Virus record (IMG/VR): IMGVR_UViG_3300037054_000148 | Location: 124,001-188,000 of that record | Strand: one strand, 5' to 3' | Length of the DNA: 64,000 nt | Part shown: piece by piece, positions 33,704 to 49,911 of the stretch | Numbering within the stretch: the first letter of the stretch is position 1 | Layout of the letters: every line of letters starts with the position of its first letter | Notes under the pieces: generated by a model | What the model was told of the DNA's origin: nothing | The model's database searches: none | What the model saw: only the letters and a program-made list of their open reading frames with translations | Program-made: the position numbers and the translations under genes

Positions 33704-34360
33704 ATGTCCGCACCCTTTAGTCTTTTACAAACGATTGGTAGTGGGGCCATAACCACTGCCTCACTGACTGGACTGGACCCCACCCTAACCTATAAATTCT
33801 ACGTAAACTCCACAAATAGTGATGGGACGAGCCCTAATTCAAACGTGGTAACCTTCGGAGCCCCTCCGCTCTTCTTTACTTATCTACCAAAATTCTTTAA
33901 GACTGTTCCTGGCACCTCTGGAATTCTAACTCAACCGGTCACTATGGTGGATGGCTCAGACCCCACCTCTTACACCTGGACCGCTACGTTGACAATGCTG
34001 AGTGTCATCCTTAACTTCCCTCCTAATACCTCTGATGACACCATCTTAAGTATCCCTGCGTCTACCACAGCCCCGACTCAAATCACCAATTATGAGTGGA
34101 CATGGTTCGACCCCGCTACAGGGACATTTTACCTTTCGAATAATTATACTAGCTGGTTCACCAATGGAGCCCGACTTTCGTTTGATGTTACGGCCACCAG
34201 AATTTCAGATGGGTTGATTTTGCAGGGAGCCTATTACTCTTTCCAAGCCCCGCCATCACTTGAGGTTGACCCCCTAACAACTTTTGGTTTTGCAGGATCA
34301 GGATTCCAGCCCTTCGGTCAGGGAACGTTCTCTCAGGGAGTTGTAAATGTCCGCAGTTAG
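33704..34360 (+). CDS. Virion protein beginning with the C-terminal half of a fibronectin type III domain
   Basis: [30 protein letters not shown] matches FN3 strands E-G; AGGAG RBS. Confidence 0.7.
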
Positions 34361-35890: not shown

Positions 35891-36577
35891 ATGGACTTCA
35901 ACTCTCAATTCGAATCTGTGCGCTCCGGACTACTCACCGAACAGACCATTCTACAACGAAACCAAGTCAAGATTGATGATCTGGAAGCTCAGAAAATCAT
36001 GAATACAAAAGCCTTGGGGGTCATAGACAAGGCCATCCAGGTCATCAGTGCAAATGGCATTGGCAAGGTGGAGTCCATCGTTTCAGATGGATTGAAACTA
36101 GTTTTTGACCAGGATCTCCAACTTGTGATTGAACGTAAGGAAGGGGCCAGGGGGGACTCCTATCGTCTCATGGTCCAGGAAGGTGATGTGATTGGCCCCC
36201 CAATCGACACGATGGGTGGGGGCGTGGTCAATGTCATCTCCTTCCTCCTCAGAGTCATCATGATCCAGCGGTTCAAATTGAATAAACTGATCATCTTGGA
36301 TGAAGCGTTCAATAACGTATCAGCGGACCGGCTCCCCAAGGTCTCAGAAATGCTCAAATCTCTCTGTGATGACCACGACTACACTATTTTATCAATAACC
36401 CAGCAGCCCTTGCTGGCGTGTGCGGCAGACCGAGTATTGAGTGTAGAGACGGGGCCGCTCCTGCGGGAGCTTACCTCTGATGAACTGGATGAATTGAGGG
36501 CAAATGGCTCAAATCAAAGTAAAGTCCGATCTGGAGATTCTGGCAAGGCTAAAAGAACTCCTTCAGCGACATCGTAA
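35891..36577 (+). CDS. SbcC/Rad50-like ABC ATPase, C-terminal half only
   Basis: Short coiled coil, signature-like MGGG, Walker B LIILDE, D-loop AFNNVS, H-loop ITQ; no Walker A. Confidence 0.85.
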   Translation: MDFNSQFESVRSGLLTEQTILQRNQVKIDDLEAQKIMNTKALGVIDKAIQVISANGIGKVESIVSDGLKLVFDQDLQLVIERKEGARGDSYRLMVQEGDVIGPPIDTMGGGVVNVISFLLRVIMIQRFKLNKLIILDEAFNNVSADRLPKVSEMLKSLCDDHDYTILSITQQPLLACAADRVLSVETGPLLRELTSDELDELRANGSNQSKVRSGDSGKAKRTPSATS

Positions 36578-36920
36578 ACGATATGTTAAGGCCAGACTCA
36601 AGCCCAAGGGCTCAAACTGTGCTCACAAAGTGTGGGACGATGCGAAAAAGGAGTGGTTCTGTGAGGGCTGTGGGTCCAGAGACCCCGAACTATGCCTCAA
36701 CCCTATGTGTTTCGAGCCTGAACTAACCAAAGAAGAACTGGCCGTGGCCTTCAGGGAGGATATCTGCAATACGCAGCGGATGCTTCGTGATTACCGGGAT
36801 ATTGCCACGCTTTTGTGGGTTCTGAGTCAGTTTGACGATCCGGCTGAGTATGAGCGGACCAAGGAAGGGTTGATTGGAATGGAGCAGCGACAGATCTCTG
36901 ACACTCCGGAGAAAAAATGA
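36504..36920 (+). CDS. Hypothetical protein with Cys cluster
   Basis: CAHK..CEGC..C..C putative zinc site. Confidence 0.6.
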   Translation: MAQIKVKSDLEILARLKELLQRHRKRYVKARLKPKGSNCAHKVWDDAKKEWFCEGCGSRDPELCLNPMCFEPELTKEELAVAFREDICNTQRMLRDYRDIATLLWVLSQFDDPAEYERTKEGLIGMEQRQISDTPEKK

Positions 36921-37012
36921 ACAAAGAGCCTATACGGATTGTCGATGTTGTGGGTATAATAGCTGTAGTGGCCATCCTCTTGGTCGCTCATTTTTTTCTG
37001 CATTGGATCTGA
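36917..37012 (+). CDS. Small membrane protein (31 aa)
   Basis: MNKEPIRIVDVVGIIAVVAILLVAHFFLHWI; overlaps the previous stop (ATGA) and ends 1 nt before the next gene. Confidence 0.45.
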   Translation: MNKEPIRIVDVVGIIAVVAILLVAHFFLHWI

Positions 37013-37013
37013 T

Positions 37014-38015
37014 ATGAAACTTCTGGTTAAAACGATCTACGGTTCTAAACTGTTCGGCACCGCCCTCCCCACTTCTGATACGGACCTAAAAGCCGTGTTC
37101 GTATGCGACATGGAGGGGTTGGTTTTCAATAAAACCGATGCGGAGAACACGGTGGAGGGAAAGGGAAGCCAGAAGGTCGAGTTCGAAGCACACCACATTT
37201 CCAACTTTTGCCGTATGCTCAAGCAGGGGCAGACTCTGGCCTACAGCATGTTGTTCACGCCAAAGGATTTGGTGGTCAGCACCTCTGATGCATGGGAGGA
37301 GTTGGTGGAGAACAAGGCTCGGCTGGTGAGCAAGAATCTTCGGCCCTTTGTCGGCTATGCTCGTTCCCAGGCTCAGAAATACAGTCTGAAGGGGGAGCGT
37401 CTGGCCACTCTTGATCATTTCATTGAGGACATTAAGATGTTCCTGGATGAAAAAGAAGTCACCCCCAATGGTCGTCTTTATGAATCCGCTTTTTGTGGGC
37501 TCATGGAGCATTACAAGGATGCTGAGGGTGCTAGACTTTGGACTGAGCACACAGCCAACATGGACGTTCGGCATATCGAGATCTGTGGCAAGAGTTTCGG
37601 TGAGACTACCCCTCTGAAGTTGTGGGTAACACCCCTGATGGAGCTTCGCAGTCGCTACGGGGGCCGCTCCCAACAGGCCAAAGAGGACAAGGGCATTGAT
37701 TTGAAGGCCATGTATCATGCGGTTCGGATCACAAGTGAGATGAACGAAATCCTCACCACTGGTAGTCTCACATACCCTAGGCCAGAGGCCCCACTGCTCA
37801 TGGATATTCGCAATGGCAAGTTGACGAATCGTGAGGTTGGTGATATCATCGACCGTCTCATCTGTACGGGTGACGAGTTGTTTGAAACCTCCACTCTTCG
37901 GGATAAACCTGATGCTGAGTGGCTGGATGACTGGCAGCTTCGCACTCAAGGTGACGCAGCCTTCTGGGCTTGGAGTAATCGAAATGCCATGGTGAGGCCC
38001 AATGCACGTTCCTGA
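37014..38015 (+). CDS. Nucleotidyltransferase (Pol beta superfamily, YcgL/RlaP-like)
   Basis: YGSKLFGTALPTSDTDLKAVF (GS..xDxD motif) and C-terminal KAMYHAVR..E..TG.LT.PR..LL.IR.G typical of the family. Confidence 0.85.
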   Translation: MKLLVKTIYGSKLFGTALPTSDTDLKAVFVCDMEGLVFNKTDAENTVEGKGSQKVEFEAHHISNFCRMLKQGQTLAYSMLFTPKDLVVSTSDAWEELVENKARLVSKNLRPFVGYARSQAQKYSLKGERLATLDHFIEDIKMFLDEKEVTPNGRLYESAFCGLMEHYKDAEGARLWTEHTANMDVRHIEICGKSFGETTPLKLWVTPLMELRSRYGGRSQQAKEDKGIDLKAMYHAVRITSEMNEILTTGSLTYPRPEAPLLMDIRNGKLTNREVGDIIDRLICTGDELFETSTLRDKPDAEWLDDWQLRTQGDAAFWAWSNRNAMVRPNARS

Positions 38016-38181
38016 TCCCGTAGAACTCTCAGAGGCGCGGATCGACCGGCTCATGGCCTTGTTTGTCGATGAACATACCTGCATGGAGTGTGGAAAGCAC
38101 GTAGACTACGAGTTGTACTGTATGTCACCACAAGGGGATGGCCCGTGCGTTTGCATGGAATGCGCGGGGGTTAGCGAGTAG
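38002..38181 (+). CDS. Small zinc-finger protein (59 aa)
   Basis: Own translation: MHVPDP..TCMECGKH..CVCMECAGVSE; fills the gap between neighbours. Confidence 0.6.
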   Translation: MHVPDPVELSEARIDRLMALFVDEHTCMECGKHVDYELYCMSPQGDGPCVCMECAGVSE

Positions 38182-38184
38182 TCT

Positions 38185-38916
38185 ATGGGTTTATACTTAC
38201 AAGACGCATGGTGGAACGACCTTAACGAATTGAGGTCCAGGACAGAGAAGCTGTATGAGAAAATAGGTCGTGATATGTGGCAAGTCACGGCTGAAAAAAT
38301 GATTGCGCTTCGAGGCTGGAAAATCAAGGAGTCTGAGGTCATTCCAGTTTTGCAGGAATTGGGAGCGTATTATGTCCCCAAGAAAATGATTCCTGGCCCC
38401 ATGTTCGTGTTCCCCAAGGTGGATGCGGCGGGGCATACCACTAGTGCTCAGACAAAGCCTCTCCACGACTTGTTTGGCCCCGGTAAGTATCATACACTAG
38501 GGGTGAGTCAGAAAGTCTTTCTAGGCCCTACCTGGATAGGGAATACAGATGAGACGCTGGAGAAGATCCTACGGCTAAAATCGGTCACACTGGCAGAGGG
38601 TCCGTTTGATTTGGTGGCCGCGAAGATCCTGGCCCCCCTCCTCCCTATTATGTCTTCCCTCACCAAGTCTATTGGAGAGAAGCATGTCGCGTATTTGAAG
38701 ATCCTTGGAGTTCAGCATCTCTACCTGTTGTTTGATCATGATGAGGCTGGTGAAAAATCTAAAATCATTCTGAGTAAAATTCTGGACATTCCGGTAGAGG
38801 CGATTGGTGATTGCCCAGGAGACGATCCTTCTGGGGCGTTAAAGACTAAAGGTACAAAAGATGCTCTCCGTCGAGTATTAAAGACCATAGAAGAGGATCA
38901 TGAACATGATGATTGA
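38185..38916 (+). CDS. DNA primase catalytic (Toprim) domain protein
   Basis: VTLAEGPFDLVA..SSLTKSIGEKHVAYLK..LYLLFDHDEAG..DDP matches DnaG Toprim; lacks the zinc-binding domain. Confidence 0.82.
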   Translation: MGLYLQDAWWNDLNELRSRTEKLYEKIGRDMWQVTAEKMIALRGWKIKESEVIPVLQELGAYYVPKKMIPGPMFVFPKVDAAGHTTSAQTKPLHDLFGPGKYHTLGVSQKVFLGPTWIGNTDETLEKILRLKSVTLAEGPFDLVAAKILAPLLPIMSSLTKSIGEKHVAYLKILGVQHLYLLFDHDEAGEKSKIILSKILDIPVEAIGDCPGDDPSGALKTKGTKDALRRVLKTIEEDHEHDD

Positions 38917-39274
38917 CTCCATCCCTTTGCTTAGAGGAGCCCTCTATAAGGTCTTCAAACACCGTGACACAGCGGAGATGATGGATGTATTTATCTCCGG
39001 AGAGTGTGGTCGCTATTGGATTTATGACCTCACTTTGGAGGATGGAACCGTTACCCCGTTTATCTACTATTCTCTCCAAGATGGAGGAGGCTGGCTCAAT
39101 ACGGGCTGCTCCTATACAGATTTTGTAGCTGCGGTGGACCAAATCATTTCCACTTGGCCTCTGTCTGAGGGTATCAAAACAATTCTTGAAAATGAAAAAT
39201 CCAGGCTTGCAAAATTGATGCAAGACAGTATCAGTAATAGCAAGCCTGATTCACTGCCCAAGGAGGCAAAATGA
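38900..39274 (+). CDS. Hypothetical protein
   Basis: ~124-aa ORF overlapping both neighbours. Confidence 0.6.
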   Translation: MNMMIDSIPLLRGALYKVFKHRDTAEMMDVFISGECGRYWIYDLTLEDGTVTPFIYYSLQDGGGWLNTGCSYTDFVAAVDQIISTWPLSEGIKTILENEKSRLAKLMQDSISNSKPDSLPKEAK

Positions 39275-39423
39275 ACAACGTAGCGAAGTTTTTTTACTCG
39301 GTCGGTGGGGTGGCGGTCGTCACTCTCGGCTCCTGGCTCCTCAATTTCGGACTCATCCATGGCCTTATCGCGGGTGTGATCCTCTGCATCGGAGCCCACA
39401 TCTTTCTTAAGCTGAAGGGGTAA
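39271..39423 (+). CDS. Small two-helix membrane protein (50 aa)
   Basis: Own translation: MNNVAKFFYSVGGVAVVTLGSWLLNFGLIHGLIAGVILCIGAHIFLKLKG; AGGAGG RBS. Confidence 0.65.
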   Translation: MNNVAKFFYSVGGVAVVTLGSWLLNFGLIHGLIAGVILCIGAHIFLKLKG

Positions 39424-39429
39424 GTCACA

Positions 39430-40737
39430 ATGATGTTTGGTAAAGGAACATGGACCCTGCTGAAACTAGTGCAGGGTGATGGGGGTGTGACCCCATTGGA
39501 AGCCTTCAAGACAGCGTTTGAAGCCGCTGGGTCTCGCTATATTCCCCTTGTGGCCATTAGCGAGGCTATCCACGAGAAGTCTTCCACGATTGGCCTCGCT
39601 CCCTTTTCTCAGCCCCGCATGGGGGATCTGGAAGAGATCGAGTTCTACGTGGACAAGGCGGCAAAGGACTTCAAATCAGAAGATACGGAGTGTTTTATCA
39701 ATAACCAGACCAACCTCCGTGAATGGGAGATGGTCGATGGGGAGCTTCTTTCGGGGCAGATTCATGTCCCCCTGGACCCTTTCTGGGAGCCAAGTTTTGA
39801 TCAGTGGCAGTTCTCCCCTGGTGTTTACGGTATGTGGGTAATGATGTTCGAGTATATCGACGCGATGGATGTGAACAGCAAGAAAGAGCATCTGGCCTAC
39901 AATTACGGTGCCCCTTTCAAGTTCCAGTCTGCGGATATCAAGAAGCAGATCACCGAACAGGTGGAGGATATCAACACCTTCGTTCGCAAGCACCATCAGG
40001 TGGTGATTGACTTCAATATGGGCTACATCTGGATTAGTAGTGGGGCAAAGGCAATTCTTGAACCCGTCATGACCTTGCTGGATGAAATGGGCCTGATTTT
40101 TGAAACCCCCACTGATTTGGTGGGAGACATCAACGCAGATGACGTTTCTGAGGCTCTGGAGACGCTGTACAACGCTTCCGTGATCAAGGATGATGTGGTG
40201 CGCCGTCTGGAAGAGTTCAAGCTCCACGGAGCCGATGGGGTTGAACCAGACTCCAACGCAGTGATGGAGAAGATCCTGAAGGCTTATTGTGCATTCAGCG
40301 AAATTCAGGGGTTCCATGTCGGCATGTCCGCGCCATTGGCCCTTTTTCTGGATCCCCGCTTCGTCTCACCCACAGCAGCCAGGAGCACCTACGAGGTGAC
40401 AGAGCTTCTCAACTCGCATGAGTCGGCACGGGTAGCAGTCGCAGATTTGACGTTCTGTCATTACACTGATCGGATTGCCAAGAACGGAGAACCCAGGAAG
40501 TTTCTGGAGAAGCTGTTCAGCATTCAGGCATCCCCTGTGTTATTCCATAAGGATATTCCAGGGCTTCGAGTCTGTGGTTTGAATATCGATAACTACAGAC
40601 GGATGATCAAGGTTCATATCAAAGCCACTGGTAATGCCCCAACGATTGCGGAATACTGGAAGATGAGTCACGACTCCATGAAGGAATCGGTGTTCACTTA
40701 CTACTCCGTGCTGAAGGACATCAAAGAATCCAGGTAA
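39430..40737 (+). CDS. Hypothetical protein, weak resemblance to RdgC
   Basis: 435 aa with GC3-rich codons; HHQVVIDFNMGYIWISSGAKAILE recalls RdgC. Tentative. Confidence 0.35.
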   Translation: MMFGKGTWTLLKLVQGDGGVTPLEAFKTAFEAAGSRYIPLVAISEAIHEKSSTIGLAPFSQPRMGDLEEIEFYVDKAAKDFKSEDTECFINNQTNLREWEMVDGELLSGQIHVPLDPFWEPSFDQWQFSPGVYGMWVMMFEYIDAMDVNSKKEHLAYNYGAPFKFQSADIKKQITEQVEDINTFVRKHHQVVIDFNMGYIWISSGAKAILEPVMTLLDEMGLIFETPTDLVGDINADDVSEALETLYNASVIKDDVVRRLEEFKLHGADGVEPDSNAVMEKILKAYCAFSEIQGFHVGMSAPLALFLDPRFVSPTAARSTYEVTELLNSHESARVAVADLTFCHYTDRIAKNGEPRKFLEKLFSIQASPVLFHKDIPGLRVCGLNIDNYRRMIKVHIKATGNAPTIAEYWKMSHDSMKESVFTYYSVLKDIKESR

Positions 40738-40762
40738 TAGATAGTAGGAAGAGGGAGCACTG

Positions 40763-41794
40763 TTGAATTTCTGGGCACCGGTATCGCTGAATCAAATTGT
40801 GGGCAACACTAGATCATTGGAGTTGCTTAGAGCGATCCTGGAGAACCGGGATCGTGCTCCCTCCTGCTATGTGTTAGACGGGCTGAATGGAGTCGGGAAG
40901 AACGCCATGGCTAAGCTGTTTCTCCATGAGTTGTTTCCCGATGTCAAACCTAAAGTTGTCCAGCCTGAATTTTTCACACAAACGCTACAACAGGAAGACC
41001 TGGACGAGTATACTTGTCTGATTTGGGATCATGCGGAGCGGCTATCCACCGAACAGGCGGATCAACTTTGCGCTTATTTGGATCGATCAGATGTGAAATC
41101 GGTTTCGGTGTTCCTCTGTGTTAATTACAACAAGGTGCATAAAGGGCTCAGGGCCAGGGCCTTACGAATTCCTTGCTTGAAGCCAAGTCGAGCGGATCTG
41201 GTTGGTCTGCTTGGCTCCATTTGCGCGAGTCACCATCTTAACTTTGAGCTAGAGGCGCTTAACCTCATAGCTGCCCGAAGTTCAGATACCCCTTCACGAG
41301 CTATTCTAGACCTTCAGGCTATTTCAGTGATGGGAGGGGTAACAACTAAGACGGTGTGTAAATTGCAAGTAAATATTGAGGAGCAAGCCATCCAGCTTCT
41401 AACTAATATTGATCATCCGGATATCATGAAAATGGCTAGTTTGATTAAGGATATGCACCCCATGGAGGAGCTTATCGATGCTTTATTTGAAGTATATTCG
41501 ACAGCTTTTTATGATAGTACAAAATCTCTTGGGGTTATTGCCGAAAAACTGAGTAATAATAAAAGGGTGGGAGACATTTTCATTAAATGGAAATCTGTTG
41601 TGGCTCCTCCCTCCTCAGCGTTGTTTATTCTCATAAAAGAACTAGTAGATTCAAGAAAAGCAGTGGAAATGCCAGTTTTCATCTCCTCCCCTTCTCCAAA
41701 AAAGGAGGTCCAACGGGCTCCCATTGCCACGGAGGAAAGTTGGAACAAAATTATTTCTGAAGCGAGTAATATCGGTGATTCTTCAATACGGTGA
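40763..41794 (+). CDS. Clamp-loader AAA+ subunit (DnaX/RFC-like)
   Basis: WAPVSLNQIVGN, YVLDGLNGVGKN, LIWDHAERLS, sensor/lid PSRAILDLQ. Confidence 0.8.
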   Translation: MNFWAPVSLNQIVGNTRSLELLRAILENRDRAPSCYVLDGLNGVGKNAMAKLFLHELFPDVKPKVVQPEFFTQTLQQEDLDEYTCLIWDHAERLSTEQADQLCAYLDRSDVKSVSVFLCVNYNKVHKGLRARALRIPCLKPSRADLVGLLGSICASHHLNFELEALNLIAARSSDTPSRAILDLQAISVMGGVTTKTVCKLQVNIEEQAIQLLTNIDHPDIMKMASLIKDMHPMEELIDALFEVYSTAFYDSTKSLGVIAEKLSNNKRVGDIFIKWKSVVAPPSSALFILIKELVDSRKAVEMPVFISSPSPKKEVQRAPIATEESWNKIISEASNIGDSSIR

Positions 41795-42872
41795 TATCAA
41801 AAAGCTCAAAGGACTCAAGTGGTATATCCTTGAAGTCAGATCAGAGCGAACAGTAGAGAACGTAATTCGTCGTGTTGGTAAGACCATGCCTACTATATTT
41901 AAGGACGGAGGGTCTTGTGAGGTGTTTGTTCCGATAGAGGACCGAGATCTCAATTTGTTTAGCCTATCCACCTCCTCCTATGTGTTTCTCCGTTCTGATC
42001 GAAAGAAAGAATTACAGAAGTTCAAAGGGGTCACAGGTGTGGTAGGGATCCTCTGTGAGGGGGAGCAGCAGCGGATTGATAAGGCCCTGATGGTGGAGGA
42101 TGACTACGTTCAGGAATTAATCAAGATGACAGAGGAGAAGTTTATGAAGAGCCCAGAGTCCATACAGGTCGGCTCCTTTGTTCGTATTCTGGATGGTTTG
42201 GATAAAGGGTTCTGTGGGCATGTATCTCGCATAGATCGAGGCTACGCCCTGATCCGGGTTGAGCTTAAAACTAGACAGATGTTCATTGATACTCCTCTGC
42301 ACAATCTCAAAGATTTGAGTTTTGTGCCACCCAACTCAAGAGTGTTTTACTACTCTGACTTAGTGGACGAGTATGTGAAGGATTACAGTGATGAGGCCAT
42401 CATGACCCTAGCTAAGGATTTGGAGTTTGTGATGGAGGTGACTGAACCCCTCCCCTCTGATGAACCAGATGAAAAGAAAGTCAAGTATGGTCGGCAGAAG
42501 ACCGTTACGGCCATGACAAAGAAATTGATATTCAGCGGCATCAAAGACCCAAAGGTCATAATTAAAGAAGCATTGGCAGCCATTGAATCAAGTGACATCA
42601 AAAAACCGAAGAGTGCGTTTATCTTCTATTCAATCCTTAAACAGGCCATCATGGAGACCCTGTTCAAAGATGATAGTAGGATCAAAACTTATAAAGATGT
42701 GGTCAAGTATTACGGGGATTCTTACCGTTTTTCTCCAAAAATGATCGCTGAATTGGATGAACATTCGATCCTATCTCCAAAAAGCGAGACCTCGGATAAA
42801 TCGAATCAGCACTCTACAGTAATAAAAATCAAACTGACCAAGGAGTCAAAATGTCAAACACCACCGGAATAG
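41775..42872 (+). CDS. NusG-family transcription factor (NGN + KOW) with a ~200-aa C-terminal extension
   Basis: KWYILEV, EVFVP, SYVFL, GVVGIL (NGN); IQVGSFVRILDGLDKGFCGHV (KOW). ORF is open from 41724. Confidence 0.85.
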   Translation: MILQYGDIKKLKGLKWYILEVRSERTVENVIRRVGKTMPTIFKDGGSCEVFVPIEDRDLNLFSLSTSSYVFLRSDRKKELQKFKGVTGVVGILCEGEQQRIDKALMVEDDYVQELIKMTEEKFMKSPESIQVGSFVRILDGLDKGFCGHVSRIDRGYALIRVELKTRQMFIDTPLHNLKDLSFVPPNSRVFYYSDLVDEYVKDYSDEAIMTLAKDLEFVMEVTEPLPSDEPDEKKVKYGRQKTVTAMTKKLIFSGIKDPKVIIKEALAAIESSDIKKPKSAFIFYSILKQAIMETLFKDDSRIKTYKDVVKYYGDSYRFSPKMIAELDEHSILSPKSETSDKSNQHSTVIKIKLTKESKCQTPPE

Positions 42873-43933
42873 GATTAGATATTGGTACCGCTTACATCGT
42901 CTCTGCCAAATCTGACATCGACAATAAAGTCAAAATTAGCTCGGTAAGGGACTGCTTTCTTGCTCTCCCTCTGGATCAATCTCCCGCATTGGAGATTGCG
43001 GGAGTGGAGTTCATTGAGGGTGCAGAGGAGGTCTATGTGGTCGGTAACGATGCGATCAATTTGATTGGTGTCCTCGGAGGGGAGCTACGCCGTCCTCTCA
43101 GCAAGGGCTTTATCAGTCCCAAGGAAGAAGATGGGAAGGAGATACTTCAACTCATCCTTCAGCAGATCCTTGGAAAGCCCCAGGTTCCGGGGGAGCTTGT
43201 GGCTTTCTCAGTACCTGGGCCTATTTTTGACGTTGAATCCACGGTCGCCCCTAAACCCAGCCATGATTCCTCTCTGACCTTCCATACCAGCTTCTTCAAG
43301 AATCTGATCACCGATCTGGGTTATACGGCCCGTCCGGTCAACGAAGCGGTAGCAGTCTGCTTCAATGAAACCGTGGTCCCCAAGAACCCATCTGAAACCC
43401 CCCTAACCGGACTCTCAATTTCGTTTGGTGCTGGCACTACAAATTTGGCCTTAACATTCAAATCTATTCCTGTTAAGTGCTTTGCTCTTCCCTTCGGCGG
43501 AGATTATGTAGACCAGATGGCAGCCAAGGCCACTGATTCCACACTTTCTCATGTAACTTTGTTGAAAGAACGTGGTGTTGATTTGATGACTGGACTCGTA
43601 ACAACCAAGGGTGAGTTTGACGATACCCAGACTGAACGTCAGGCCGAAGCAATTGCAGTCGCCTATGCAGACCTAATCACTAAATTGGTCAACGCCACCA
43701 ATAAATTCTTCAGCTTCAATGAGAATCGTGTGGAAATCCCTGATACTATTCCGGTCATCCTGGCGGGTGGGACTACTAAGGCCCCCAATTTCATGAAACT
43801 TTTCAATAAAATTTTCATGGAGAATCTTGATGTGAGATTCAAAGTTTCAGAGGCAAGGCTGTCCGCAACTCCTTTGGATGCTACGGCCAGTGGCTGCTTG
43901 AACTTCGTCCGGATCCTTCAGAAAAGAGGCTAA
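42851..43933 (+). CDS. Actin-fold ATPase (MreB/MamK/ParM-like)
   Basis: Phosphate 1 GLDIGTAY, connect 1 NEAVAV, phosphate 2 SFGAGTTN, FGGDYVD, adenosine LAGGTTKAPNF. Confidence 0.88.
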   Translation: MSNTTGIGLDIGTAYIVSAKSDIDNKVKISSVRDCFLALPLDQSPALEIAGVEFIEGAEEVYVVGNDAINLIGVLGGELRRPLSKGFISPKEEDGKEILQLILQQILGKPQVPGELVAFSVPGPIFDVESTVAPKPSHDSSLTFHTSFFKNLITDLGYTARPVNEAVAVCFNETVVPKNPSETPLTGLSISFGAGTTNLALTFKSIPVKCFALPFGGDYVDQMAAKATDSTLSHVTLLKERGVDLMTGLVTTKGEFDDTQTERQAEAIAVAYADLITKLVNATNKFFSFNENRVEIPDTIPVILAGGTTKAPNFMKLFNKIFMENLDVRFKVSEARLSATPLDATASGCLNFVRILQKRG

Positions 43934-43985
43934 TCGGAGTAGTGGGCTACCCGTTTCTCTGTTTGTAGCGGAACAGGTAACTCTC

Positions 43986-44873
43986 ATGAATGACGATAAA
44001 GCTCTCCTTAATTCAGTCCCAGCATTGGTCCCAGCCCCAGCGGTTACCCCGCTCCCCGTGGCCCCCCCGAGACTTCAAATGCCCACCATTAATTTCAGTG
44101 GTGGGCATTTTATCATAATGCTCATAGCCATTGGAATCACATGGTGGGTGACTAAACGCAATCTCCCTACTCAAGCCATCGCTCAGACTCAGATGGCTCA
44201 ATTCCAAGCCCTTTCTGATAAAGTTGACCAACTAGCCGGTCACGTAGTCACACAATCTGACCTTGAAGACAAGGTTAAGGCTCAGATGGGATCAGCCTTC
44301 TCCGCAGCGGTAGCCAAACAGGATGGAACCCTCACTAATCTTGCCACAGCAGTTGGGCAAATCCAGGGGCAATTATCAGCTATGGGTCAGACCACGGTAC
44401 AGAAAACACCTACCGGAGGCTTCAGCACCACTCTGAATCAGGATAGAGGGGCAGCCCCCCCGCTTACCAGTGTAAATCTCACATATGATCCGACCTCCTC
44501 TGGGCTTAAAAGTCAGTGGGATAATCATACTGAAAAATTTACAGCAAGTTATGGAGAGTGGAGAACTAGCGGGGATGGCGCGAGAGCGGCACTTACACTG
44601 TCTAGGGATGTGTATAACGGCTCAGTGAAAGTTGGAACTGAACAGATCCCCCTAGTCAACGGAGACGCCTATTTCAGTCAATCTGATATTGCTCGAACTG
44701 CTCCAACACCAAAGTATACGTTTATGATTGGATCCAGTTATGATATGCAAACAGGGAAACCCCACCTGAGTGGTCTGATCGGAAAGCAGTTCTCCCCAGT
44801 ATCTGGGATTGCTACCGGCTATGTGAATAACGGATGGACAGTCCTTTATACCTATAGGTTTGGCACGAAATAG
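43986..44873 (+). CDS. Membrane-anchored protein with coiled coil and beta-rich C-terminus
   Basis: Hydrophobic FIIMLIAIGITWWV, Gln-rich coil, alternating beta strands ending in YTYRFGTK. Confidence 0.7.
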   Translation: MNDDKALLNSVPALVPAPAVTPLPVAPPRLQMPTINFSGGHFIIMLIAIGITWWVTKRNLPTQAIAQTQMAQFQALSDKVDQLAGHVVTQSDLEDKVKAQMGSAFSAAVAKQDGTLTNLATAVGQIQGQLSAMGQTTVQKTPTGGFSTTLNQDRGAAPPLTSVNLTYDPTSSGLKSQWDNHTEKFTASYGEWRTSGDGARAALTLSRDVYNGSVKVGTEQIPLVNGDAYFSQSDIARTAPTPKYTFMIGSSYDMQTGKPHLSGLIGKQFSPVSGIATGYVNNGWTVLYTYRFGTK

Positions 44874-45018
44874 TGTATTTTTAACACTGAGTCAGAATCG
44901 TAGTTTTATGCGAGTTCCTCAACAACATAAAAGTAAATTTTGGCCTTAATAAACTGAATATTCAGTACCTAGAATAGGTGAGGAACTTCCCCCTTTTTGA
45001 TATCATAGGAGACGCAAC

Positions 45019-45525
45019 ATGGCAGCACCCATCAATGCAACTGGAGTGACTGGAGCAACCGGAGCAACTGCTCCTCCCCTCCCCCCCATCACTATTGTAA
45101 TCAACAAGGCACAGTTTGAGGCGGCGGTCCAGCAGTATCTCAACTTATCCCCCGCAAAGGCAGAGTTGGATGTCATCAAGTCGTTGAGTTGGCCGTCCTG
45201 CTGCACCCCCCCAGCCCTTTGGACTACTATGGCAGATGTGGAGACCCTGATTGCCTTGGTCGCCTCAGCTTGTGAGTTGGCAAAGACGGCTATCCTGAAA
45301 CAGTATGACCCTGCGGGAACCTTGGGAAACAAGATTGACAACGAGATCGTACTCGCTGTGGCAGTGCAGATTGTGGGTCAGGCCATTTCCTTTGGTGGCA
45401 TTTTCGGGGTACTGGCCGAGCATCTGAAAGAGGGGCTCCTCTCTATGCTGGTAAGCGTCTGGGTAGACCAGCAGCCCACAAACTGGGTTTCGCTGGCAGA
45501 AAAAATTCTCGGCCTCAGTCTCTAA
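45019..45525 (+). CDS. Hypothetical protein
   Basis: AGGAG RBS; short GAT repeats at the N-terminus; hydrophobic C-terminal helices. Confidence 0.65.
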   Translation: MAAPINATGVTGATGATAPPLPPITIVINKAQFEAAVQQYLNLSPAKAELDVIKSLSWPSCCTPPALWTTMADVETLIALVASACELAKTAILKQYDPAGTLGNKIDNEIVLAVAVQIVGQAISFGGIFGVLAEHLKEGLLSMLVSVWVDQQPTNWVSLAEKILGLSL

Positions 45526-45536
45526 TCGAGGTCAAT

Positions 45537-45812
45537 GTGTGCCTTCTTGCTAAAATCGGAGATCATGAATACCTGGCCTTTTTTAAGCCAGTGCATGGCA
45601 GCACCGACTACAGCGGGAGAATAGAACTCCGAGACTCCACCTTTCAAACTATCCCTCTTGATTCTCTACTCGGCCCCATTGGTAGTATCCTGGTTAAGGA
45701 TCCCGCTGAGGCCGATTGGCATGAAATGTCTATAGAAGATTTAAAACAACTGGCCAAGGATTCTATGGCGAAATCTCTCGTCGGCCTGCAAAGTCTTTCG
45801 AAGCAGTCATGA
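45537..45812 (+). CDS. Hypothetical protein
   Basis: 91 aa with GAGG RBS. Confidence 0.55.
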   Translation: MCLLAKIGDHEYLAFFKPVHGSTDYSGRIELRDSTFQTIPLDSLLGPIGSILVKDPAEADWHEMSIEDLKQLAKDSMAKSLVGLQSLSKQS

Positions 45813-45851
45813 CAAAACGCAGTATTAGTAGAGCAGGTAGAAGGAGTTTGG

Positions 45852-46097
45852 GTGGGTGTCTTGAGCCTTAGTAAGTTAGACCGTATTGAACCGAAGGGCG
45901 GGACACGCTCCACATATGAGAAGAGGGCACCGGCAGGTTCCAAGGCAATTCCGTGCTGTCTCCAATGTAGGGCACCCTTTGACTTGGCAGAATTGTCTAT
46001 GGTAGATCAGATGGACGCCCTGGACGGTGTTTTGATTTGTGAAGATTGCAAGAAAGAGAACAAACTTTCTGAGCAAAAGCATCACCATTTCGAGTAA
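45852..46097 (+). CDS. Small zinc-finger protein
   Basis: CLQC...CEDC; AAGGAG RBS. Confidence 0.6.
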   Translation: MGVLSLSKLDRIEPKGGTRSTYEKRAPAGSKAIPCCLQCRAPFDLAELSMVDQMDALDGVLICEDCKKENKLSEQKHHHFE

Positions 46098-46151
46098 TAC
46101 ATAACATACCAGCGGAATCCTCCGCACCCCGTTAACTCAAAGGAGAGTCCT

Positions 46152-46358
46152 ATGACCACCAAGCCCGATGTAACCTCAGTCATCAGAGGAGAGTTCGCCA
46201 AGACCGACACGCTCACCGTCAAGCAGATCAGAGCCATCAGTCCCGAACTCGACAACGCCAATCTCGTTCGCAAGGGGTTCAAGGCCCTGATTGCCGAGAA
46301 TCTCTGCACTCTGGAGGGCAGCAAGCGCGGATCCAAATACGTCCGCAAGCAGTCCTAA
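46152..46358 (+). CDS. Small basic winged-helix DNA-binding protein
   Basis: LTVKQIRAI..LVRKGFKALIAENLCTLEGSKRGSKY; strong RBS and its own terminator. Confidence 0.65.
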   Translation: MTTKPDVTSVIRGEFAKTDTLTVKQIRAISPELDNANLVRKGFKALIAENLCTLEGSKRGSKYVRKQS

Positions 46359-46392
46359 CCAGACCCCAAGAGCACAGCAAGTTGATGAGTAG

Positions 46393-46422
46393 ACCGAGGC
46401 TTAAATGAGCCTCGGTTTTTTA
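46393..46422 (+). terminator. Rho-independent terminator
   Basis: ACCGAGGCT-TAAATG-AGCCTCGGT followed by a T-tract. Confidence 0.88.
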
Positions 46423-46460
46423 TTGCTGGACTTTTTGTCCCTCCTGTAGAGGGGGTAGCC

Positions 46461-47246
46461 ATGCGACCCATATGTTTTGCCCTAGTGATGGGGTTGGTAT
46501 TAATGGTAAATTGCGGGAGGACACCTCCCCCCATAAAGACGGTGGCCCCCGTTCCGGCTGAAACAACCATTCGGACTAAGGTAGAGGAACAGGCCGTTTC
46601 TAAATCAGTGGCGAAAGCTGTCCAGCAGTCTCATCTTAAGATAGCAGCCACTCCTAAACCACCTCCTAAACCCCCTGAGAAGGAAGCAATGGATACTTTG
46701 GAAGTGGAAACTGACACCTCTGTTTGGACAGTGGGGAAGACGGGGATCATTACAGTGGTGATCGCTGAGCCGGAACTAGTAGCGGACGCCTCTCATTCGA
46801 ATGAGATTGGCATCGGGTCCACTTTGGTGCCTATCTCCGCATACTATCTCGTAGCCCTCGAAGGAGCCCTTCCAGGGCAGTTTGATATCGCTCCCGCCCC
46901 AGGACAGCAGGAAAAGCAACACAGGGCTCCAAAGGGCTATCCGGCCACTTGGCGATACGAAATCACACCGCTTCGCAAGGGGAAGGTGGACCTTCTCTTC
47001 ACCCTGAAAATTTTTGCGGAGAATGATACGGCTGGGACAGCCATCGCTACCCGTCCCCTTCATCTGGATGTTACCTCAAAATTTCCCTCTTCATTTTTAT
47101 TCAGTCTGAACCACACTATTACCAACGGCCCCGGCTGGGGAGCAGTATTAGGAGTTGTGGCCGCCCTCATCACAGCGTTGGCATATTCAACGTGGTGGAG
47201 AAGTAGGCGCAAAAGTCGTAAAAAGCAAATCGTTTCGAAGGACTGA
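46461..47246 (+). CDS. Putative lipoprotein/secreted protein with C-terminal transmembrane helix
   Basis: N-terminal signal ending in C (LVLMVNC), Pro-rich linker, beta-rich core, C-terminal TM helix and basic tail. Confidence 0.65.
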   Translation: MRPICFALVMGLVLMVNCGRTPPPIKTVAPVPAETTIRTKVEEQAVSKSVAKAVQQSHLKIAATPKPPPKPPEKEAMDTLEVETDTSVWTVGKTGIITVVIAEPELVADASHSNEIGIGSTLVPISAYYLVALEGALPGQFDIAPAPGQQEKQHRAPKGYPATWRYEITPLRKGKVDLLFTLKIFAENDTAGTAIATRPLHLDVTSKFPSSFLFSLNHTITNGPGWGAVLGVVAALITALAYSTWWRSRRKSRKKQIVSKD

Positions 47247-47291
47247 AACCAGCTAGTTTACCACTACCAGCTTCTCTTGAAAGGGGACACA

Positions 47292-47519
47292 ATGGACACC
47301 GTGAAACAGTCTTGTCAGGTGTTGGATCGCATCCTACGTCAGGGTGGGGTGATCGATGAATCTGCGTTACCCTATGATAACGACTTGCTTATGTACAGAC
47401 TAACCCAGAGAAAGTTCATTCAGCCTACCGCTACGTATGACAGCGGGGAACGCATTTTTGCCATAACCGACAAGGGCATTGCAGAATTGGAGCGTCACCC
47501 CAGTCATGCCGGGAACTGA
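47292..47519 (+). CDS. Small winged-helix-like protein
   Basis: LMYRLTQRKFI....RIFAITDKGIAELE, the typical wHTH wing ending (Y.iT.kG..eL). Confidence 0.55.
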   Translation: MDTVKQSCQVLDRILRQGGVIDESALPYDNDLLMYRLTQRKFIQPTATYDSGERIFAITDKGIAELERHPSHAGN

Positions 47520-47793
47520 TATGTTTCCCGTTGACTACCGCATCCACCAGTTGGAATTGCGTGTCAACGGCTGGTTGTTCCCCCATGTATGGCTGGCTAT
47601 TTATTCATTTGATAAAGTCGTGAAGTATGCTCTGATGGTTGAAGACCCCACCTTTGGCAGATTCGAATTATCAAGTAATATGGTAGTAGAATGGAAGACC
47701 AAAGGACGATGGTATCAGACTAAGCCGCAGTTTGTGATTAATCACCTACTCGCTAAAGGAGCGTACGATGACGCAGAGGCCCAAGAAGGTTGA
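47479..47793 (+). CDS. Hypothetical protein (start uncertain)
   Basis: ~100-aa ORF in an operon-like run. Confidence 0.55.
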   Translation: MQNWSVTPVMPGTDMFPVDYRIHQLELRVNGWLFPHVWLAIYSFDKVVKYALMVEDPTFGRFELSSNMVVEWKTKGRWYQTKPQFVINHLLAKGAYDDAEAQEG

Positions 47794-47947
47794 AGATATT
47801 GAAGACCAGATGGACGCAGCGATTGATCAAAAAGATCATAAGGAAATGAGAAAGTGCCGCCATGGGATCAGCAAACATATCGAATCCAGCGTTAAGCTCA
47901 GGATTTCTGATGAGGTGGAAGATCCCCCATCCTGGAAATACGAGTAA
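47768..47947 (+). CDS. Small hypothetical protein (59 aa)
   Basis: Own translation: MTQRPKKVEDIEDQ..WKYE; AAGGAG RBS. Confidence 0.55.
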   Translation: MTQRPKKVEDIEDQMDAAIDQKDHKEMRKCRHGISKHIESSVKLRISDEVEDPPSWKYE

Positions 47948-47955
47948 TACGTAAG

Positions 47956-49911
47956 GTGAGGGTCGGCGTGGACGAACAGTGCCCACTGGTTACACCATAT
48001 ACGGATAATGAAGGCATCCCAGTAAAGATGCTGGAGTTGCTGTATCGGATCCGAAAGCATGATCCGGAGGACGGGCCTATTCCGGTCCCAGTCCCCTCAT
48101 GCTTTCGAGAATTTTCCCTCACGGCGCATAAACCAGTAAAACTTAAAAACTTCCAGACCCAAATGACGGCCCATCTGATCAAGATGCATCGGTTTATCAA
48201 TGGGGAGGGGACGGGCCTGGGTAAGACCCTGGAGAGCATCGCTGCGGCTGCCTATCTGCATGAGAAGCACGGCTGCAAAATCTTGGTCTTGGGCACTAAA
48301 TCAACTACATATCAGTGGAAGACAGAGGGATTTGACGAGTTCACCACACTCAGGACTCATGTGGCCACCGACACTTACAAGGGGCTGAAGGGGTCGCAAG
48401 CCAGACTCGCTCAGATCACAGATTTTCTTAAAAATGATATGTGTGATGTGATGATATGCAAATATTCCTCTCTCATCGGCAGAACCAAATCTCTAGAAGG
48501 TGAATTTGACGAACAGGGCTACCCAATTGAAAAAGGTCAACGAGAAGAGTTAAGCCAGGAAGTGAAGGATCTGATTCAGATTGTCGAACCTTACGGGGAG
48601 AAACTGATTCTGATTTGCGATGAGGCTCAGAAATTTAAATCCACCACTACCCAGGTTCGCAAAATGATTTTGGAGTTGCAGAGCCGAGTGGGCCGAGTGT
48701 GGGCCATGACTGCTACGGTTATCCAGAATAGTTTGGAAGAATTCTATAGTATCGCTAGCGCGATTGGGATCCGCCCCTTTGGGGGGATGGCTAAGTTCAG
48801 AGATCGCTTCTGCAAGTATCAGATGTCATATATCGGCAACGGGAGGCAGAAGCCTTCGTTAGTGGGTTACCGGAATGTCAAAGAATTCAAGATTGGGATG
48901 CGCCCCTTTTACTTGGGTCGGTCCTGTGCTCAGGTAAAAGAGCCTCTACCTAAGCTCACCACTCTCTATCACCCGATTGATCTGGACGCCAAACAGGTCA
49001 AAATGTTGGAAGACATCCGAAGTAAAAAGCTGGTGCTCCCGCCCTCTATTCACAAAATAGCCGGGGAAATCGTAGAGAAAGAGCGGGATGCGGATAACCG
49101 GATGACTATGTTGTCGGTTATGCAGTTAATTTCAAATCATCCCTGCCTTATTGACCCCACTGACAAAAAAGCCTTCTTCTCTAAGTCCCTTAGCCCGAAG
49201 GAGGAGGCCCTGCTTGAGCTTCTAGACGGAGAGCTTGCGGGGGAGAAGGTCTTAGTCTTCACAAAATCCAGAAAGTGGATTGACCGATTTGAGCAGCTTT
49301 GTAAGGATGGCCATTTTACTAATCGTAAGTTCCTCCGGATCACTGGGGCTGAAGACGAAAAGCAACGGGACACCAACAAACGTCTGTTCCAAACTGACCC
49401 CGACTATAATCTGTTGTTCATCAACACTGCAATTATGGAGGGGGCAAACCTTCAACAATCTGCCCATATGATTCTCTTGGATGCTCCGTGGGGTTGGGGG
49501 GCACTGATTCAATTGGTGGGCCGGATGGTCCGGATGTCAAGTCCTCACTCGGTTTGTACCTTGCATGTGGTATGTGCTAAAGGCACGATTGATGAATATG
49601 TGATCGATACGCTGCGAGGCAAGAAAGGGGTGTTTGACATCATTCTTGGAGAGTCCCATGCGGCGGGACTGCTGGACACCGGGAATGACCTCGATCTTTC
49701 TAGCGGTATGGAAACCCTGAATGATGACAAGGAGTTTAGGGAACTTTTGACCGCTCATGTCAAAACTACAAAAATGGGCGACTATTTGAAAGGCAAAATC
49801 CTCGCAGAAGCAATAGGGGAGGGGGAAGATTATGTAATGAGCTTCGAGAAGGAGCCCAAAGAGAGTAATAAGAACAAGAAGAAATCATTCGAGTTTTCTG
49901 AGAAATGGTGA
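47956..49911 (+). CDS. SNF2-family (SF2) helicase/ATPase
   Basis: GEGTGLGKT, ICDEAQ, MTAT, EGANLQ..LLDAPW..IQLVGRMVR. Confidence 0.92.
   Translation: MRVGVDEQCPLVTPYTDNEGIPVKMLELLYRIRKHDPEDGPIPVPVPSCFREFSLTAHKPVKLKNFQTQMTAHLIKMHRFINGEGTGLGKTLESIAAAAYLHEKHGCKILVLGTKSTTYQWKTEGFDEFTTLRTHVATDTYKGLKGSQARLAQITDFLKNDMCDVMICKYSSLIGRTKSLEGEFDEQGYPIEKGQREELSQEVKDLIQIVEPYGEKLILICDEAQKFKSTTTQVRKMILELQSRVGRVWAMTATVIQNSLEEFYSIASAIGIRPFGGMAKFRDRFCKYQMSYIGNGRQKPSLVGYRNVKEFKIGMRPFYLGRSCAQVKEPLPKLTTLYHPIDLDAKQVKMLEDIRSKKLVLPPSIHKIAGEIVEKERDADNRMTMLSVMQLISNHPCLIDPTDKKAFFSKSLSPKEEALLELLDGELAGEKVLVFTKSRKWIDRFEQLCKDGHFTNRKFLRITGAEDEKQRDTNKRLFQTDPDYNLLFINTAIMEGANLQQSAHMILLDAPWGWGALIQLVGRMVRMSSPHSVCTLHVVCAKGTIDEYVIDTLRGKKGVFDIILGESHAAGLLDTGNDLDLSSGMETLNDDKEFRELLTAHVKTTKMGDYLKGKILAEAIGEGEDYVMSFEKEPKESNKNKKKSFEFSEKW

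What the first reader, a model, noticed from the sequence alone, without database searches (positions are those of the whole stretch)
42851..43933. Phage actin-fold ATPase translationally coupled to the clamp-loader and NusG genes
Seen: all actin-fold motifs are intact. The gene overlaps the NusG gene end and is followed by a membrane-anchored coiled-coil protein. No ParR/parC-like adaptor or centromere repeats are evident. Established: some large phages use tubulin (PhuZ) or actin-like proteins (AlpC of CGP3) to position DNA. Inference: a filament system for replication-factory positioning or capsid transport, perhaps with a membrane anchor.
Basis: partly seen in the sequence, partly recalled or inferred. 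Interest (0 to 1): 0.6.

Follow-up and report, generated by a model that had tools for sequence, protein, structure and literature searches.

The report
Volactin-type actin gene in jumbo phage
A 313-kb peat-soil bacteriophage carries a well-conserved gene for an actin-like protein of the "volactin" family, so far studied only in salt-loving archaea; it probably builds filaments inside the infected cell, but what those filaments would move or organise is not known.

Summary
The ORF at 42851-43933 (+) is real and encodes a 360-aa actin-fold protein. It matches Pfam PF25216 (Volactin) over its full length (E 2.8e-48, 165 bits against a cut-off of 35). The AlphaFold model is confident (pLDDT 91). 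Its best structural matches are the filament formers MamK, BeeR and MreB.

The window lies in a CheckV-complete 313.6-kb jumbo phage found in peat metagenomes. Its nearest cultured relative is Tunturiibacter (Acidobacteriota) phage Tunturi_5.

The gene overlaps the end of a NusG-like gene by 22 nt and has its own AAGGAG ribosome-binding site. The block primase-like / 435-aa protein / clamp loader / NusG-like / actin is kept in relatives down to 56% actin identity. dN/dS is about 0.05.

- The phosphate-2 motif is SxGxGxxN, not DxGxGxxD. This holds across the whole family.
- The downstream membrane protein is not an actin partner. Tunturi_5 has it without the actin, and a 70%-identity relative has the actin without it.
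- The actin is an accessory gene in this phage lineage.

No adaptor, centromere repeats or tubulin were found. Filament formation and a role in organising replication are inferred, not shown. In sequence databases the family is mostly viral.

The parts
42851..43933 (+). Volactin-family actin-like ATPase gene (360 aa)
   Evidence: Pfam PF25216 E 2.8e-48, 165.5 bits, cut-off 35. AF2 model pLDDT 91. VIA-align Z 28.5 to the MamK filament, 27.3 to BeeR, 25.9 to MreB. dN/dS 0.05-0.06 against relatives.
42840..42845 (+). Shine-Dalgarno-like AAGGAG, 5 nt before the actin ATG, inside the end of the upstream gene
   Evidence: Read directly from the sequence.
42872..42889 (+). Phosphate-1 motif GLDIGT (residues 8-13)
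   Evidence: G8, D10, G12 and T13 are invariant in 37 family members.
43337..43354 (+). Connect-1 region VNEAVA (N164, E165)
   Evidence: Invariant N-E; aligns with S-E-P of MamK.
43421..43444 (+). Variant phosphate-2 motif SFGAGTTN (S191...N198)
   Evidence: Aligns with VDIGAGTTD of MamK, IDIGGGTSD of BeeR and VDIGAGTMD of FtsA. Ser and Asn are invariant family-wide.
43760..43777 (+). Adenosine motif LAGGTT (G306, G307)
   Evidence: Invariant GG; aligns with the GGG of MamK and BeeR.
41775..42872 (+). NusG-like gene (NGN+KOW-like N-terminal half, unassigned C-terminal half); the ORF could also start at TTG 41724
   Evidence: phrog_6386 E 2e-4 and weak KOW matches. Profile against NusG 2lq8 E 0.0015. 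41% identical to Tunturi_5 gp25, annotated 'transcription antiterminator'. Always immediately upstream of the actin in clade A.
40763..41794 (+). Clamp-loader (RFC-like AAA+) gene
   Evidence: phrog_5846 E 3e-14. The homologue in L012 carries an RFC lid domain.
39430..40737 (+). Conserved 435-aa protein of the same operon
   Evidence: Homologous to Tunturi_5 gp23, E 1e-28; that record annotates gp23 as 'exonuclease recombination-associated protein'. No family match found here.
38185..38916 (+). Primase-like (Toprim) gene at the head of the conserved block
   Evidence: phrog_47 E 1.3e-7. The L012 homologue has Toprim_2.
43986..44873 (+). Downstream single-pass membrane protein (TM ~39-58, helical 63-131, beta domain 165-290); part of the lineage backbone, not an actin-specific partner
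   Evidence: Hydropathy. Low-confidence fold, pLDDT 47. Homologue gp26 is present in the actin-less Tunturi_5. No match in the actin-bearing L007 record.

Best explanation
The gene encodes a phage member of the volactin family of actin homologues. It is an ATP-binding, very probably polymerising protein of the MreB/MamK/BeeR branch. It is made from the same tightly packed operon as the phage's primase-like, clamp-loader and NusG-like genes, so most likely in the replication phase of infection. The proposed mechanism is that ATP-bound subunits assemble into dynamic filaments in the host cytoplasm, as archaeal volactin does. The phage would use these filaments as its only cytomotive or scaffolding polymer to organise infection in space. 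The most likely role is holding or positioning the replicating genome and its factory in a large-burst jumbo-phage infection. Shown: family membership, fold, conserved nucleotide-site residues, purifying selection, operon context, accessory status in the lineage, and absence of tubulin. Inferred: ATPase activity, polymerisation, timing of expression, and the cargo.
For: Family: PF25216 at 165 bits, full length. All 155 homologues found carry PF25216. Volactin forms dynamic filaments in vivo in Haloferax volcanii (PMC10869688). Fold: pLDDT 91. The top matches are filament structures: MamK Z 28.5 (rmsd 3.0, 304 residues), BeeR 27.3, Mbl/MreB about 26. The profile against PDB sequences finds only MamK (2e-10), BeeR, FtsA and MreB at E < 1e-4. 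Nucleotide-site residues are invariant. dN/dS is 0.02-0.06. Operon: the overlaps are 20 and 22 nt, and the predicted promoters and terminators in 36500-48000 are no more numerous than in shuffled sequence. The block primase / 435-aa / clamp loader / NusG-like / actin is conserved at 69-70% and 56% actin identity. The genome has no tubulin (PhuZ) and no second actin. Short contigs 100% identical to parts of the gene occur in peat and permafrost metatranscriptome libraries from four studies.
Against: No direct evidence of polymerisation. The Asp of phosphate 2 that other actins have is Ser. From general knowledge, replacing that Asp impairs hydrolysis in ParM and MreB. DnaK nucleotide-binding domains score nearly as well structurally (Z 24.7 against 28.5). 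The gene is dispensable for the lineage, since Tunturi_5 lacks it. In other large phages the homologue sits in an unrelated neighbourhood with weak, below-threshold family matches, so the replication link may be local history rather than function. RNA-library contigs do not prove transcription.
Confidence: 0.5

Rival explanations
1. Virion-assembly or capsid-trafficking filament. The polymer would move or align capsids or tails, as the PhuZ tubulin does for capsids in chimalliviruses, rather than acting on DNA.
For: In the huge-phage relatives (LR745208, and the loci L011 and L013) the homologue lies beside large conserved proteins with weak, below-threshold matches to DUF2460 and DUF4815. Reading these as structural genes rests on my own knowledge of those domains. 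In the window, terminase, portal and tail-fibre genes lie 7-24 kb upstream on the same strand.
Against: In clade A the immediate, conserved neighbours are replication and transcription genes. The structural-domain matches in the huge phages fall below Pfam cut-offs.
Confidence: 0.12
2. Host-takeover factor. The phage actin would reshape or enlarge the host cell, or block its division, by forming its own filaments or by interfering with host MreB or FtsA.
For: The only studied family member, volactin, acts in cell-shape transition (PMC10869688). The fold is closest to the shape and positioning actins MamK and MreB. The gene is accessory, as takeover genes often are.
Against: No membrane-targeting helix is evident. 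Identity to MreB-type proteins is about 17% and the MreB Pfam score is below cut-off, so co-polymerisation is unlikely. There is no supporting context.
Confidence: 0.12
3. A non-polymerising ASKHA ATPase, for example a chaperone- or EutJ-like factor serving the replication proteins.
For: Hsp70/DnaK nucleotide-binding domains align at Z about 24.5, and EutJ appears among the hits. The phosphate-2 Asp is missing. The self-association prediction gave no verdict.
Against: Sequence profiles pick only filament-forming actins at significant E-values. The family's founding member polymerises in vivo. There is no substrate-binding or lid domain: the protein is a bare 360-aa actin core.
Confidence: 0.12
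4. Partition motor (ParM/AlpC-like) that segregates the phage genome as an episome during a carrier or pseudolysogenic state.
For: Known phage and plasmid actins (ParM, Alp7A, AlpC of CGP3) do this (PMC4446434 and PMC5539076, listed).
Against: There is no adaptor gene: both flanking genes exist without the actin in Tunturi_5. There are no centromere-like repeats. No ParM/StbA family match appears in the Pfam scan. The genome looks like that of a lytic jumbo myovirus relative.
Confidence: 0.05

Closest known systems
Volactin (VolA, HVO_2015) of Haloferax volcanii; Pfam PF25216
   Same: Same Pfam family, with a full-length match at 165 bits. Same invariant residues, including the unusual SxGxGxxN phosphate-2 motif. 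Same size class, with no extra domains.
   Different: Only about 33-34% identical to the haloarchaeal proteins, which score 340-465 bits on the profile and form a separate tight clade. Encoded by a bacteriophage, not a cell. Carries three clade-specific insertions, at about residues 125-140, 172-186 and 245-262. The archaeal role, the rod-to-disk shape transition, has no obvious counterpart here.
MamK (magnetosome-positioning actin), PDB 5ljv
   Same: Best structural match (Z 28.5, rmsd 3.0 over 304 residues) and best sequence-profile match (E 2e-10). MamK is an organelle-positioning filament, which is the kind of job proposed here.
   Different: 19% identity. MamK has the canonical DxGxGxxD phosphate-2 motif. 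It works with MamJ and other magnetosome partners that are absent here.
BeeR (three-stranded tubular bacterial actin, PDB 8r2n; PMC11929497)
   Same: Second-best structural match (Z 27.3) and second-best profile match (E 7e-8).
   Different: 18% identity. A cellular protein of Verrucomicrobiota. Its filament architecture cannot be transferred to this protein without experiment.
AlpC/AlpA of Corynebacterium prophage CGP3, and ParMRC
   Same: AlpC is a phage-encoded actin-like protein linked to viral DNA replication and transport (PMC4446434, PMC5539076).
   Different: Those systems need an adjacent DNA-binding adaptor and cis sites, and none is found here. They belong to different actin subfamilies. 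CGP3 is a temperate prophage, whereas this is a probably lytic jumbo phage.
PhuZ tubulin spindle of nucleus-forming jumbo phages (Chimalliviridae)
   Same: A cytomotive filament encoded by a jumbo phage, used to position the replication compartment and move capsids. This is the functional analogy.
   Different: PhuZ has the tubulin fold. This genome has no tubulin match and no detectable multisubunit RNA polymerase beta subunit. Its terminase is related to Tunturi_5, and no chimallivirus record was among its matches.

Membership tests
Volactin family (Pfam PF25216) | Whole-protein score above the curated Pfam cut-off, with full-length coverage | tested here: met
   165.5 bits against a cut-off of 35; residues 7-350 match profile positions 3-318 of 321. 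Repeated on the genome at 164.7 bits.
Volactin family (Pfam PF25216) | Family-invariant residues shared with the haloarchaeal members (D10/G12/T13, R81-P82, N164-E165, S191xGxGxxN198, G306-G307) | tested here: met
   Invariant in alignment A1, which holds 37 sequences including Natronomonas proteins.
Volactin family (Pfam PF25216) | Orthology with cellular volactin (same clade as HVO_2015-type proteins) | tested here: not met
   The window protein lies in a phage-only clade of 19 rows (SH-aLRT 100). The 12 labelled haloarchaeal rows, with three unlabelled metagenomic rows, form a separate clade (support 99). It is a family member, not an orthologue.
Volactin family (Pfam PF25216) | Dynamic filament formation in vivo | not testable with these tools
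   Shown only for Haloferax volactin (PMC10869688).
Polymerising prokaryotic actins (MreB/MamK/FtsA/BeeR branch of the ASKHA superfamily) | Four-subdomain actin fold closest to the filament formers | tested here: met
   Z 28.5 MamK, 27.3 BeeR, 25-26 MreB/Mbl, 25.5 crenactin. DnaK follows closely at 24.7.
Polymerising prokaryotic actins (MreB/MamK/FtsA/BeeR branch of the ASKHA superfamily) | Five canonical nucleotide-binding motifs | tested here: inconclusive
   Four are canonical. Phosphate 2 has Ser and Asn in place of the two Asp residues, family-wide.
Polymerising prokaryotic actins (MreB/MamK/FtsA/BeeR branch of the ASKHA superfamily) | Self-assembly into protofilaments | not testable with these tools
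MreB/Mbl (PF06723) | Score above the Pfam cut-off | tested here: not met
   20.5 bits against a cut-off of 27, covering residues 58-130 only; 13.9 bits in the genome search.
ParMRC / AlpAC-type actin segregation systems | Adjacent small DNA-binding adaptor gene specific to the actin | tested here: not met
   Both flanking genes have homologues in Tunturi_5, which lacks the actin.
ParMRC / AlpAC-type actin segregation systems | Centromere-like iterated repeats near the operon | tested here: not met
   Only chance-level short repeats in 36000-48000, and no tandem arrays near the gene.
PhuZ-type phage spindle | Tubulin/FtsZ-fold GTPase | tested here: not met
   No PF00091 match in the 313.6-kb genome, while 13 of 14 control genomes gave a match.

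The most novel reading that the evidence does not exclude
Volactin-type actins are first of all a virus cytoskeleton. Many lineages of jumbo and huge tailed phages of bacteria would use them as an actin-based counterpart of the PhuZ tubulin spindle. The single, tightly conserved haloarchaeal volactin would then be one cellular offshoot of this mostly viral family, exchanged between viruses and the ancestor of Halobacteria.
Probability: 0.2. Interest if true: 0.75.

Novelty: new member of a known kind. Interest (0 to 1): 0.5.

Why it matters
Phage cell biology has one well-studied cytoskeleton, the PhuZ tubulin of nucleus-forming jumbo phages, plus a few ParM-like partition actins. This finding points to a different actin family that is common in large phages and has been studied only in haloarchaea.

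The supporting numbers are:
- All 155 homologues found in the metagenome search carry PF25216.
- In the nearest ESM Atlas clusters, 78-94% of members with a taxonomy record are Uroviricota.
- The family occurs in phage genomes from 215 kb to 595 kb.

If the protein polymerises in infected cells, it would show that jumbo phages without a proteinaceous nucleus also organise infection with their own filaments. It would also offer a simple, adaptor-less actin for mechanistic study, with a natural Asp-to-Ser variant at the catalytic phosphate-2 site. Finally, it would bear on where the haloarchaeal volactin came from.

The related cultivable system, Tunturiibacter with phage Tunturi_5, naturally lacks the gene. 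That makes it a ready background for gain-of-function tests.

Tried and rejected
- The complex prediction of two copies of the protein returned 'no answer'. I do not use it for or against binding.
- The AlphaFold model of the downstream membrane protein, built on 10 homologues, was too poor to search with (pLDDT 47). Only its secondary-structure outline is used.
- PHROGs has no family for the actin, and a single-sequence search of the PDB found nothing. The profile search was needed.
- The pattern scan of genome contigs with the broad alignment A1 failed because no stretch was conserved enough. The narrower alignment A6 worked, but the 80 loci shown were all Halobacteria. The other 273 matches were not seen.
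- 'Relatives' cannot be drawn for a virus record.
- Scans of viral contigs with the NusG-like alignment and with Tunturi_5 gp25 gave nothing new. I therefore could not count how many relatives lack the actin.
- Profile-profile tests for homology between the window's flanking genes and those of the huge-phage loci were negative. No universal partner gene emerged.
- The apparent lead in the COBRA paper was a false one: 'actin' there matched 'actinophages'.
- Outgroup rooting of the family tree rests on a branch of 4.8 changes per site with long-branch warnings. I draw no direction of transfer from it.
- I did not run the large representative-protein search, because the family scans had already settled membership.
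- No other genetic code was used.
Full report
**What is there.** The ORF 42851..43933 (+) exists as described and encodes 360 residues. Its ATG is preceded by AAGGAG at 42840-42845 with a 5-nt spacer. The upstream ORF ends with TAG at 42870-42872, so the two genes overlap by 22 nt. The upstream gene most likely starts at GTG 41775, because the homologues' ORFs begin at the equivalent position. From that start it overlaps the clamp-loader stop (41794) by 20 nt. The actin stop is followed by a 52-nt spacer and then the 43986 gene.

**Family.** Pfam places the protein in PF25216 (Volactin) with E 2.8e-48 and 165.5 bits against a cut-off of 35. The match covers residues 7-350 and profile positions 3-318 of 321. 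FtsA and MreB_Mbl match only below their cut-offs. PHROGs has no family for it. Volactin (HVO_2015) is the actin homologue of Haloferax volcanii. It forms dynamic filaments that span the cytoplasm, are anchored at the membrane by their tips, and are needed for timely rod-to-disk transition (PMC10869688).

**Fold.** An AlphaFold model built on 37 homologues is confident (pLDDT 91.1, pTM 0.89).
- Foldseek's best PDB matches are Mbl/MreB, MamK, crenactin, BeeR and FtsA.
- VIA-align ranks the MamK filament first (Z 28.5, rmsd 3.0, 304 residues, 19% identity). BeeR follows at 27.3, Mbl at 26.1, MreB at 25.9, crenactin at 25.5, eukaryotic actin at 24.9 and DnaK at 24.7.
- The spread in Z is small, so structure alone does not exclude an Hsp70-like ATPase.
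- The family's sequence profile, however, finds only MamK (2e-10), BeeR (7e-8), FtsA and MreB in the PDB at E < 1e-4.

**Motifs.** Across 37 family members from phages and haloarchaea the invariant residues include G8, D10, G12 and T13 (phosphate 1), R81-P82, N164-E165 (connect 1), S191, G193, G195 and N198 (phosphate 2), and G306-G307 (adenosine). The HMM alignment puts the family's 'SFGAGxxN' against 'DIGAGTTD' of MamK, 'DIGGGTSD' of BeeR and 'DIGAGTMD' of FtsA. This is a trait of the whole family, including the cellular members, and not a defect of this gene. From general knowledge, the equivalent Asp is needed for normal hydrolysis in ParM and MreB, so the family may hydrolyse ATP differently. 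This is untested.

**The genome.** The window is bases 124001-188000 of a 313,597-bp IMG/VR virus record that CheckV rates as complete.
- It encodes a large terminase, portal, DNA polymerase, collagen-like tail fibre, helicase, UvsX-like recombinase and exonuclease.
- The terminase is 43.7% identical to that of Tunturiibacter phage Tunturi_5, a 309-kb jumbo myovirus of Acidobacteriota from Finnish tundra soil.
- It is 31% identical to that of the 485-kb uncultured phage LR745208.
- The stretch around the gene (41700-44900) occurs nearly identically in peat and freshwater metagenomes from many studies.
- An acidobacterial host is therefore an inference from kinship and habitat.
- The genome has no tubulin, no second actin-like gene and no detectable RNA polymerase beta homologue.

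**Context and comparative genomics.** The gene is the fifth in a same-strand block:
- primase-like gene (38185);
- a 435-aa protein (39430);
- clamp loader (40763; phrog_5846 E 3e-14);
- NusG-like gene (41775);
- the actin.

The NusG call is weak and covers only the N-terminal half: phrog_6386 E 2e-4, KOW E 0.015-0.06, and the profile against NusG 2lq8 E 0.0015. The block is conserved with tight gene spacing in relatives whose actin is 90%, 69-70% and 56% identical.

Tunturi_5 has the same backbone: primase gp22, gp23 (a homologue of the 435-aa protein, E 1e-28), clamp loader gp24 and antiterminator gp25 (41% identical). There, gp25 is followed directly by gp26, a homologue of the window's 43986 product (E 3e-17). 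The complete Tunturi_5 genome has no volactin match by tblastn or by the Pfam HMM.

Conversely, the 221-kb relative behind L007 has the actin but no match to a profile of the 43986 family. In L004 a homing endonuclease (phrog_314, E 4e-21) sits between the two genes.

Three conclusions follow.
- The actin is an accessory gene lying between two backbone genes. Whether it was inserted or lost cannot be told.
- The membrane protein is not its dedicated anchor.
- Neither neighbour is an actin-specific adaptor.

No centromere-like repeats are present. The gene itself is under strong purifying selection, with dN/dS 0.02-0.06, although dS is near saturation.

**The family at large.**
- The word-based search found 155 homologues, all carrying PF25216.
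- Those at 41-100% identity and about 360 aa form the window's clade, found on contigs up to 305 kb.
- A second tier at 31-40% identity, mostly about 330-350 aa long, includes proteins on contigs of 160-595 kb. These contigs look like phage by gene content, and their gene neighbourhoods are unrelated to the window's.
- The second tier also includes the haloarchaeal proteins.
- In a quick maximum-likelihood tree the window's clade is monophyletic (SH-aLRT 100) on a long stem. The haloarchaeal sequences form one tight clade (99), and several other phage-like clades lie between them.
- The root is unreliable.
- Among species-representative prokaryote genomes, 353 loci matched; the 80 best were all Halobacteria.
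- In a sample of 401 genomes of that phylum, 88 passed the cut-off, at 340-465 bits.
- The nearest ESM Atlas clusters all carry PF25216, and among members with a taxonomy record 78-94% are Uroviricota.
- In sequence space, then, this family is largely viral.

**Expression.** Short contigs 100% identical to parts of the stretch occur in four peat and permafrost metatranscriptome libraries from four studies. Some lie inside the actin gene (43025-43276, 43598-44083). These are assembled contigs in RNA libraries, which can also hold DNA. They are compatible with transcription in situ but do not prove it.

**Mechanism and rivals.** The best-supported reading is an ATP-dependent, filament-forming actin made together with the replication genes. 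The phage would use it to organise infection in space, most likely the replicating DNA or factory. I put about 0.9 on family membership, about 0.65 on polymerisation, and about 0.3 on the specific replication-positioning role. The rivals are listed with their tests in the Rival explanations section:
- a role in virion assembly or capsid traffic, suggested by the different context in huge phages;
- manipulation of host shape or division, suggested by volactin's role;
- a non-polymerising ASKHA ATPase;
- an episome partition motor, which is disfavoured by the lack of an adaptor and a centromere.

**Novelty.** Phage actin-like proteins are known (AlpC/AlpA of CGP3: PMC4446434, PMC5539076), and so is the volactin family. 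Automatic annotation already labels viral proteins as 'Volactin domain-containing'. In the paper library I found no study of a phage volactin-type actin. I therefore file it as a new member of a known kind. It has an unusual host (a bacteriophage rather than a haloarchaeon), clade-specific insertions, and no known partners.

**Limits.** The complex prediction gave no verdict, and the downstream protein could not be folded with confidence. I could not count actin-less relatives beyond Tunturi_5. Host assignment and timing of expression are inferences.

Noticed in passing
L004:7144-7932 (relative IMGVR_UViG_3300014168_000003): A 262-aa homing endonuclease (phrog_314, E 4e-21) is inserted in the spacer between the actin gene and the homologue of the 43986 gene. 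The window itself has only a 52-nt spacer there.
   Followed up: yes
window 4320-5570: A 416-aa HNH/homing endonuclease gene (phrog_655, E 9e-23). This is a second sign of mobile endonucleases in this phage group.
   Followed up: no
window 34347-35864, with tandem repeats at 35247-35329: A tail-fibre gene with collagen-like repeats: about 8 copies of a 9-nt unit GGTATCCAA, and many PHROG tail-fibre and collagen-like matches.
   Followed up: no
window 39430-40737: A conserved 435-aa protein with no Pfam or PHROG match here. Its Tunturi_5 homologue gp23 (E 1e-28) is annotated 'exonuclease recombination-associated protein'. It always sits between the primase-like gene and the clamp loader.
   Followed up: partly
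G218:C38:30224-31171, G238:C1:411632-412576, G338:C1:3718877-3719857 and others (haloarchaeal genomes): Some haloarchaea carry a second full-length volactin domain inside open frames of about 1100-1250 aa. These are volactin paralogues fused to large extra regions, and some genomes have 2-4 matches.
   Followed up: no
L011:7075-7731 and L012:9060-9260: In a ~466-kb huge phage a ferritin-family gene lies immediately upstream of the volactin homologue. In the 256-kb relative a 66-aa 'Sequestin' (PF21825) gene lies immediately downstream.
   Followed up: no
L009, L011, L013 (huge-phage loci): A second conserved neighbourhood surrounds the volactin homologue: a ~460-aa Cys-rich protein upstream, then a 372-472-aa protein, a Zn-ribbon protein and a 987-1665-aa protein downstream. 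By profile comparison it is unrelated to the window's neighbours.
   Followed up: partly
window 46391-46418: The only strong intrinsic-terminator-like hairpin of the region (12-bp stem followed by a T-run). It lies 1.5 kb downstream of the 43986 gene, which fits a long transcription unit through the actin gene.
   Followed up: no
BFVD hit G3MAP7 (Bacillus phage G Gp506): Another megaphage protein with an actin-like fold (371 aa, Foldseek E 5e-11, 12% identity). Actin-fold proteins may recur in very large phages outside the volactin family.
   Followed up: no
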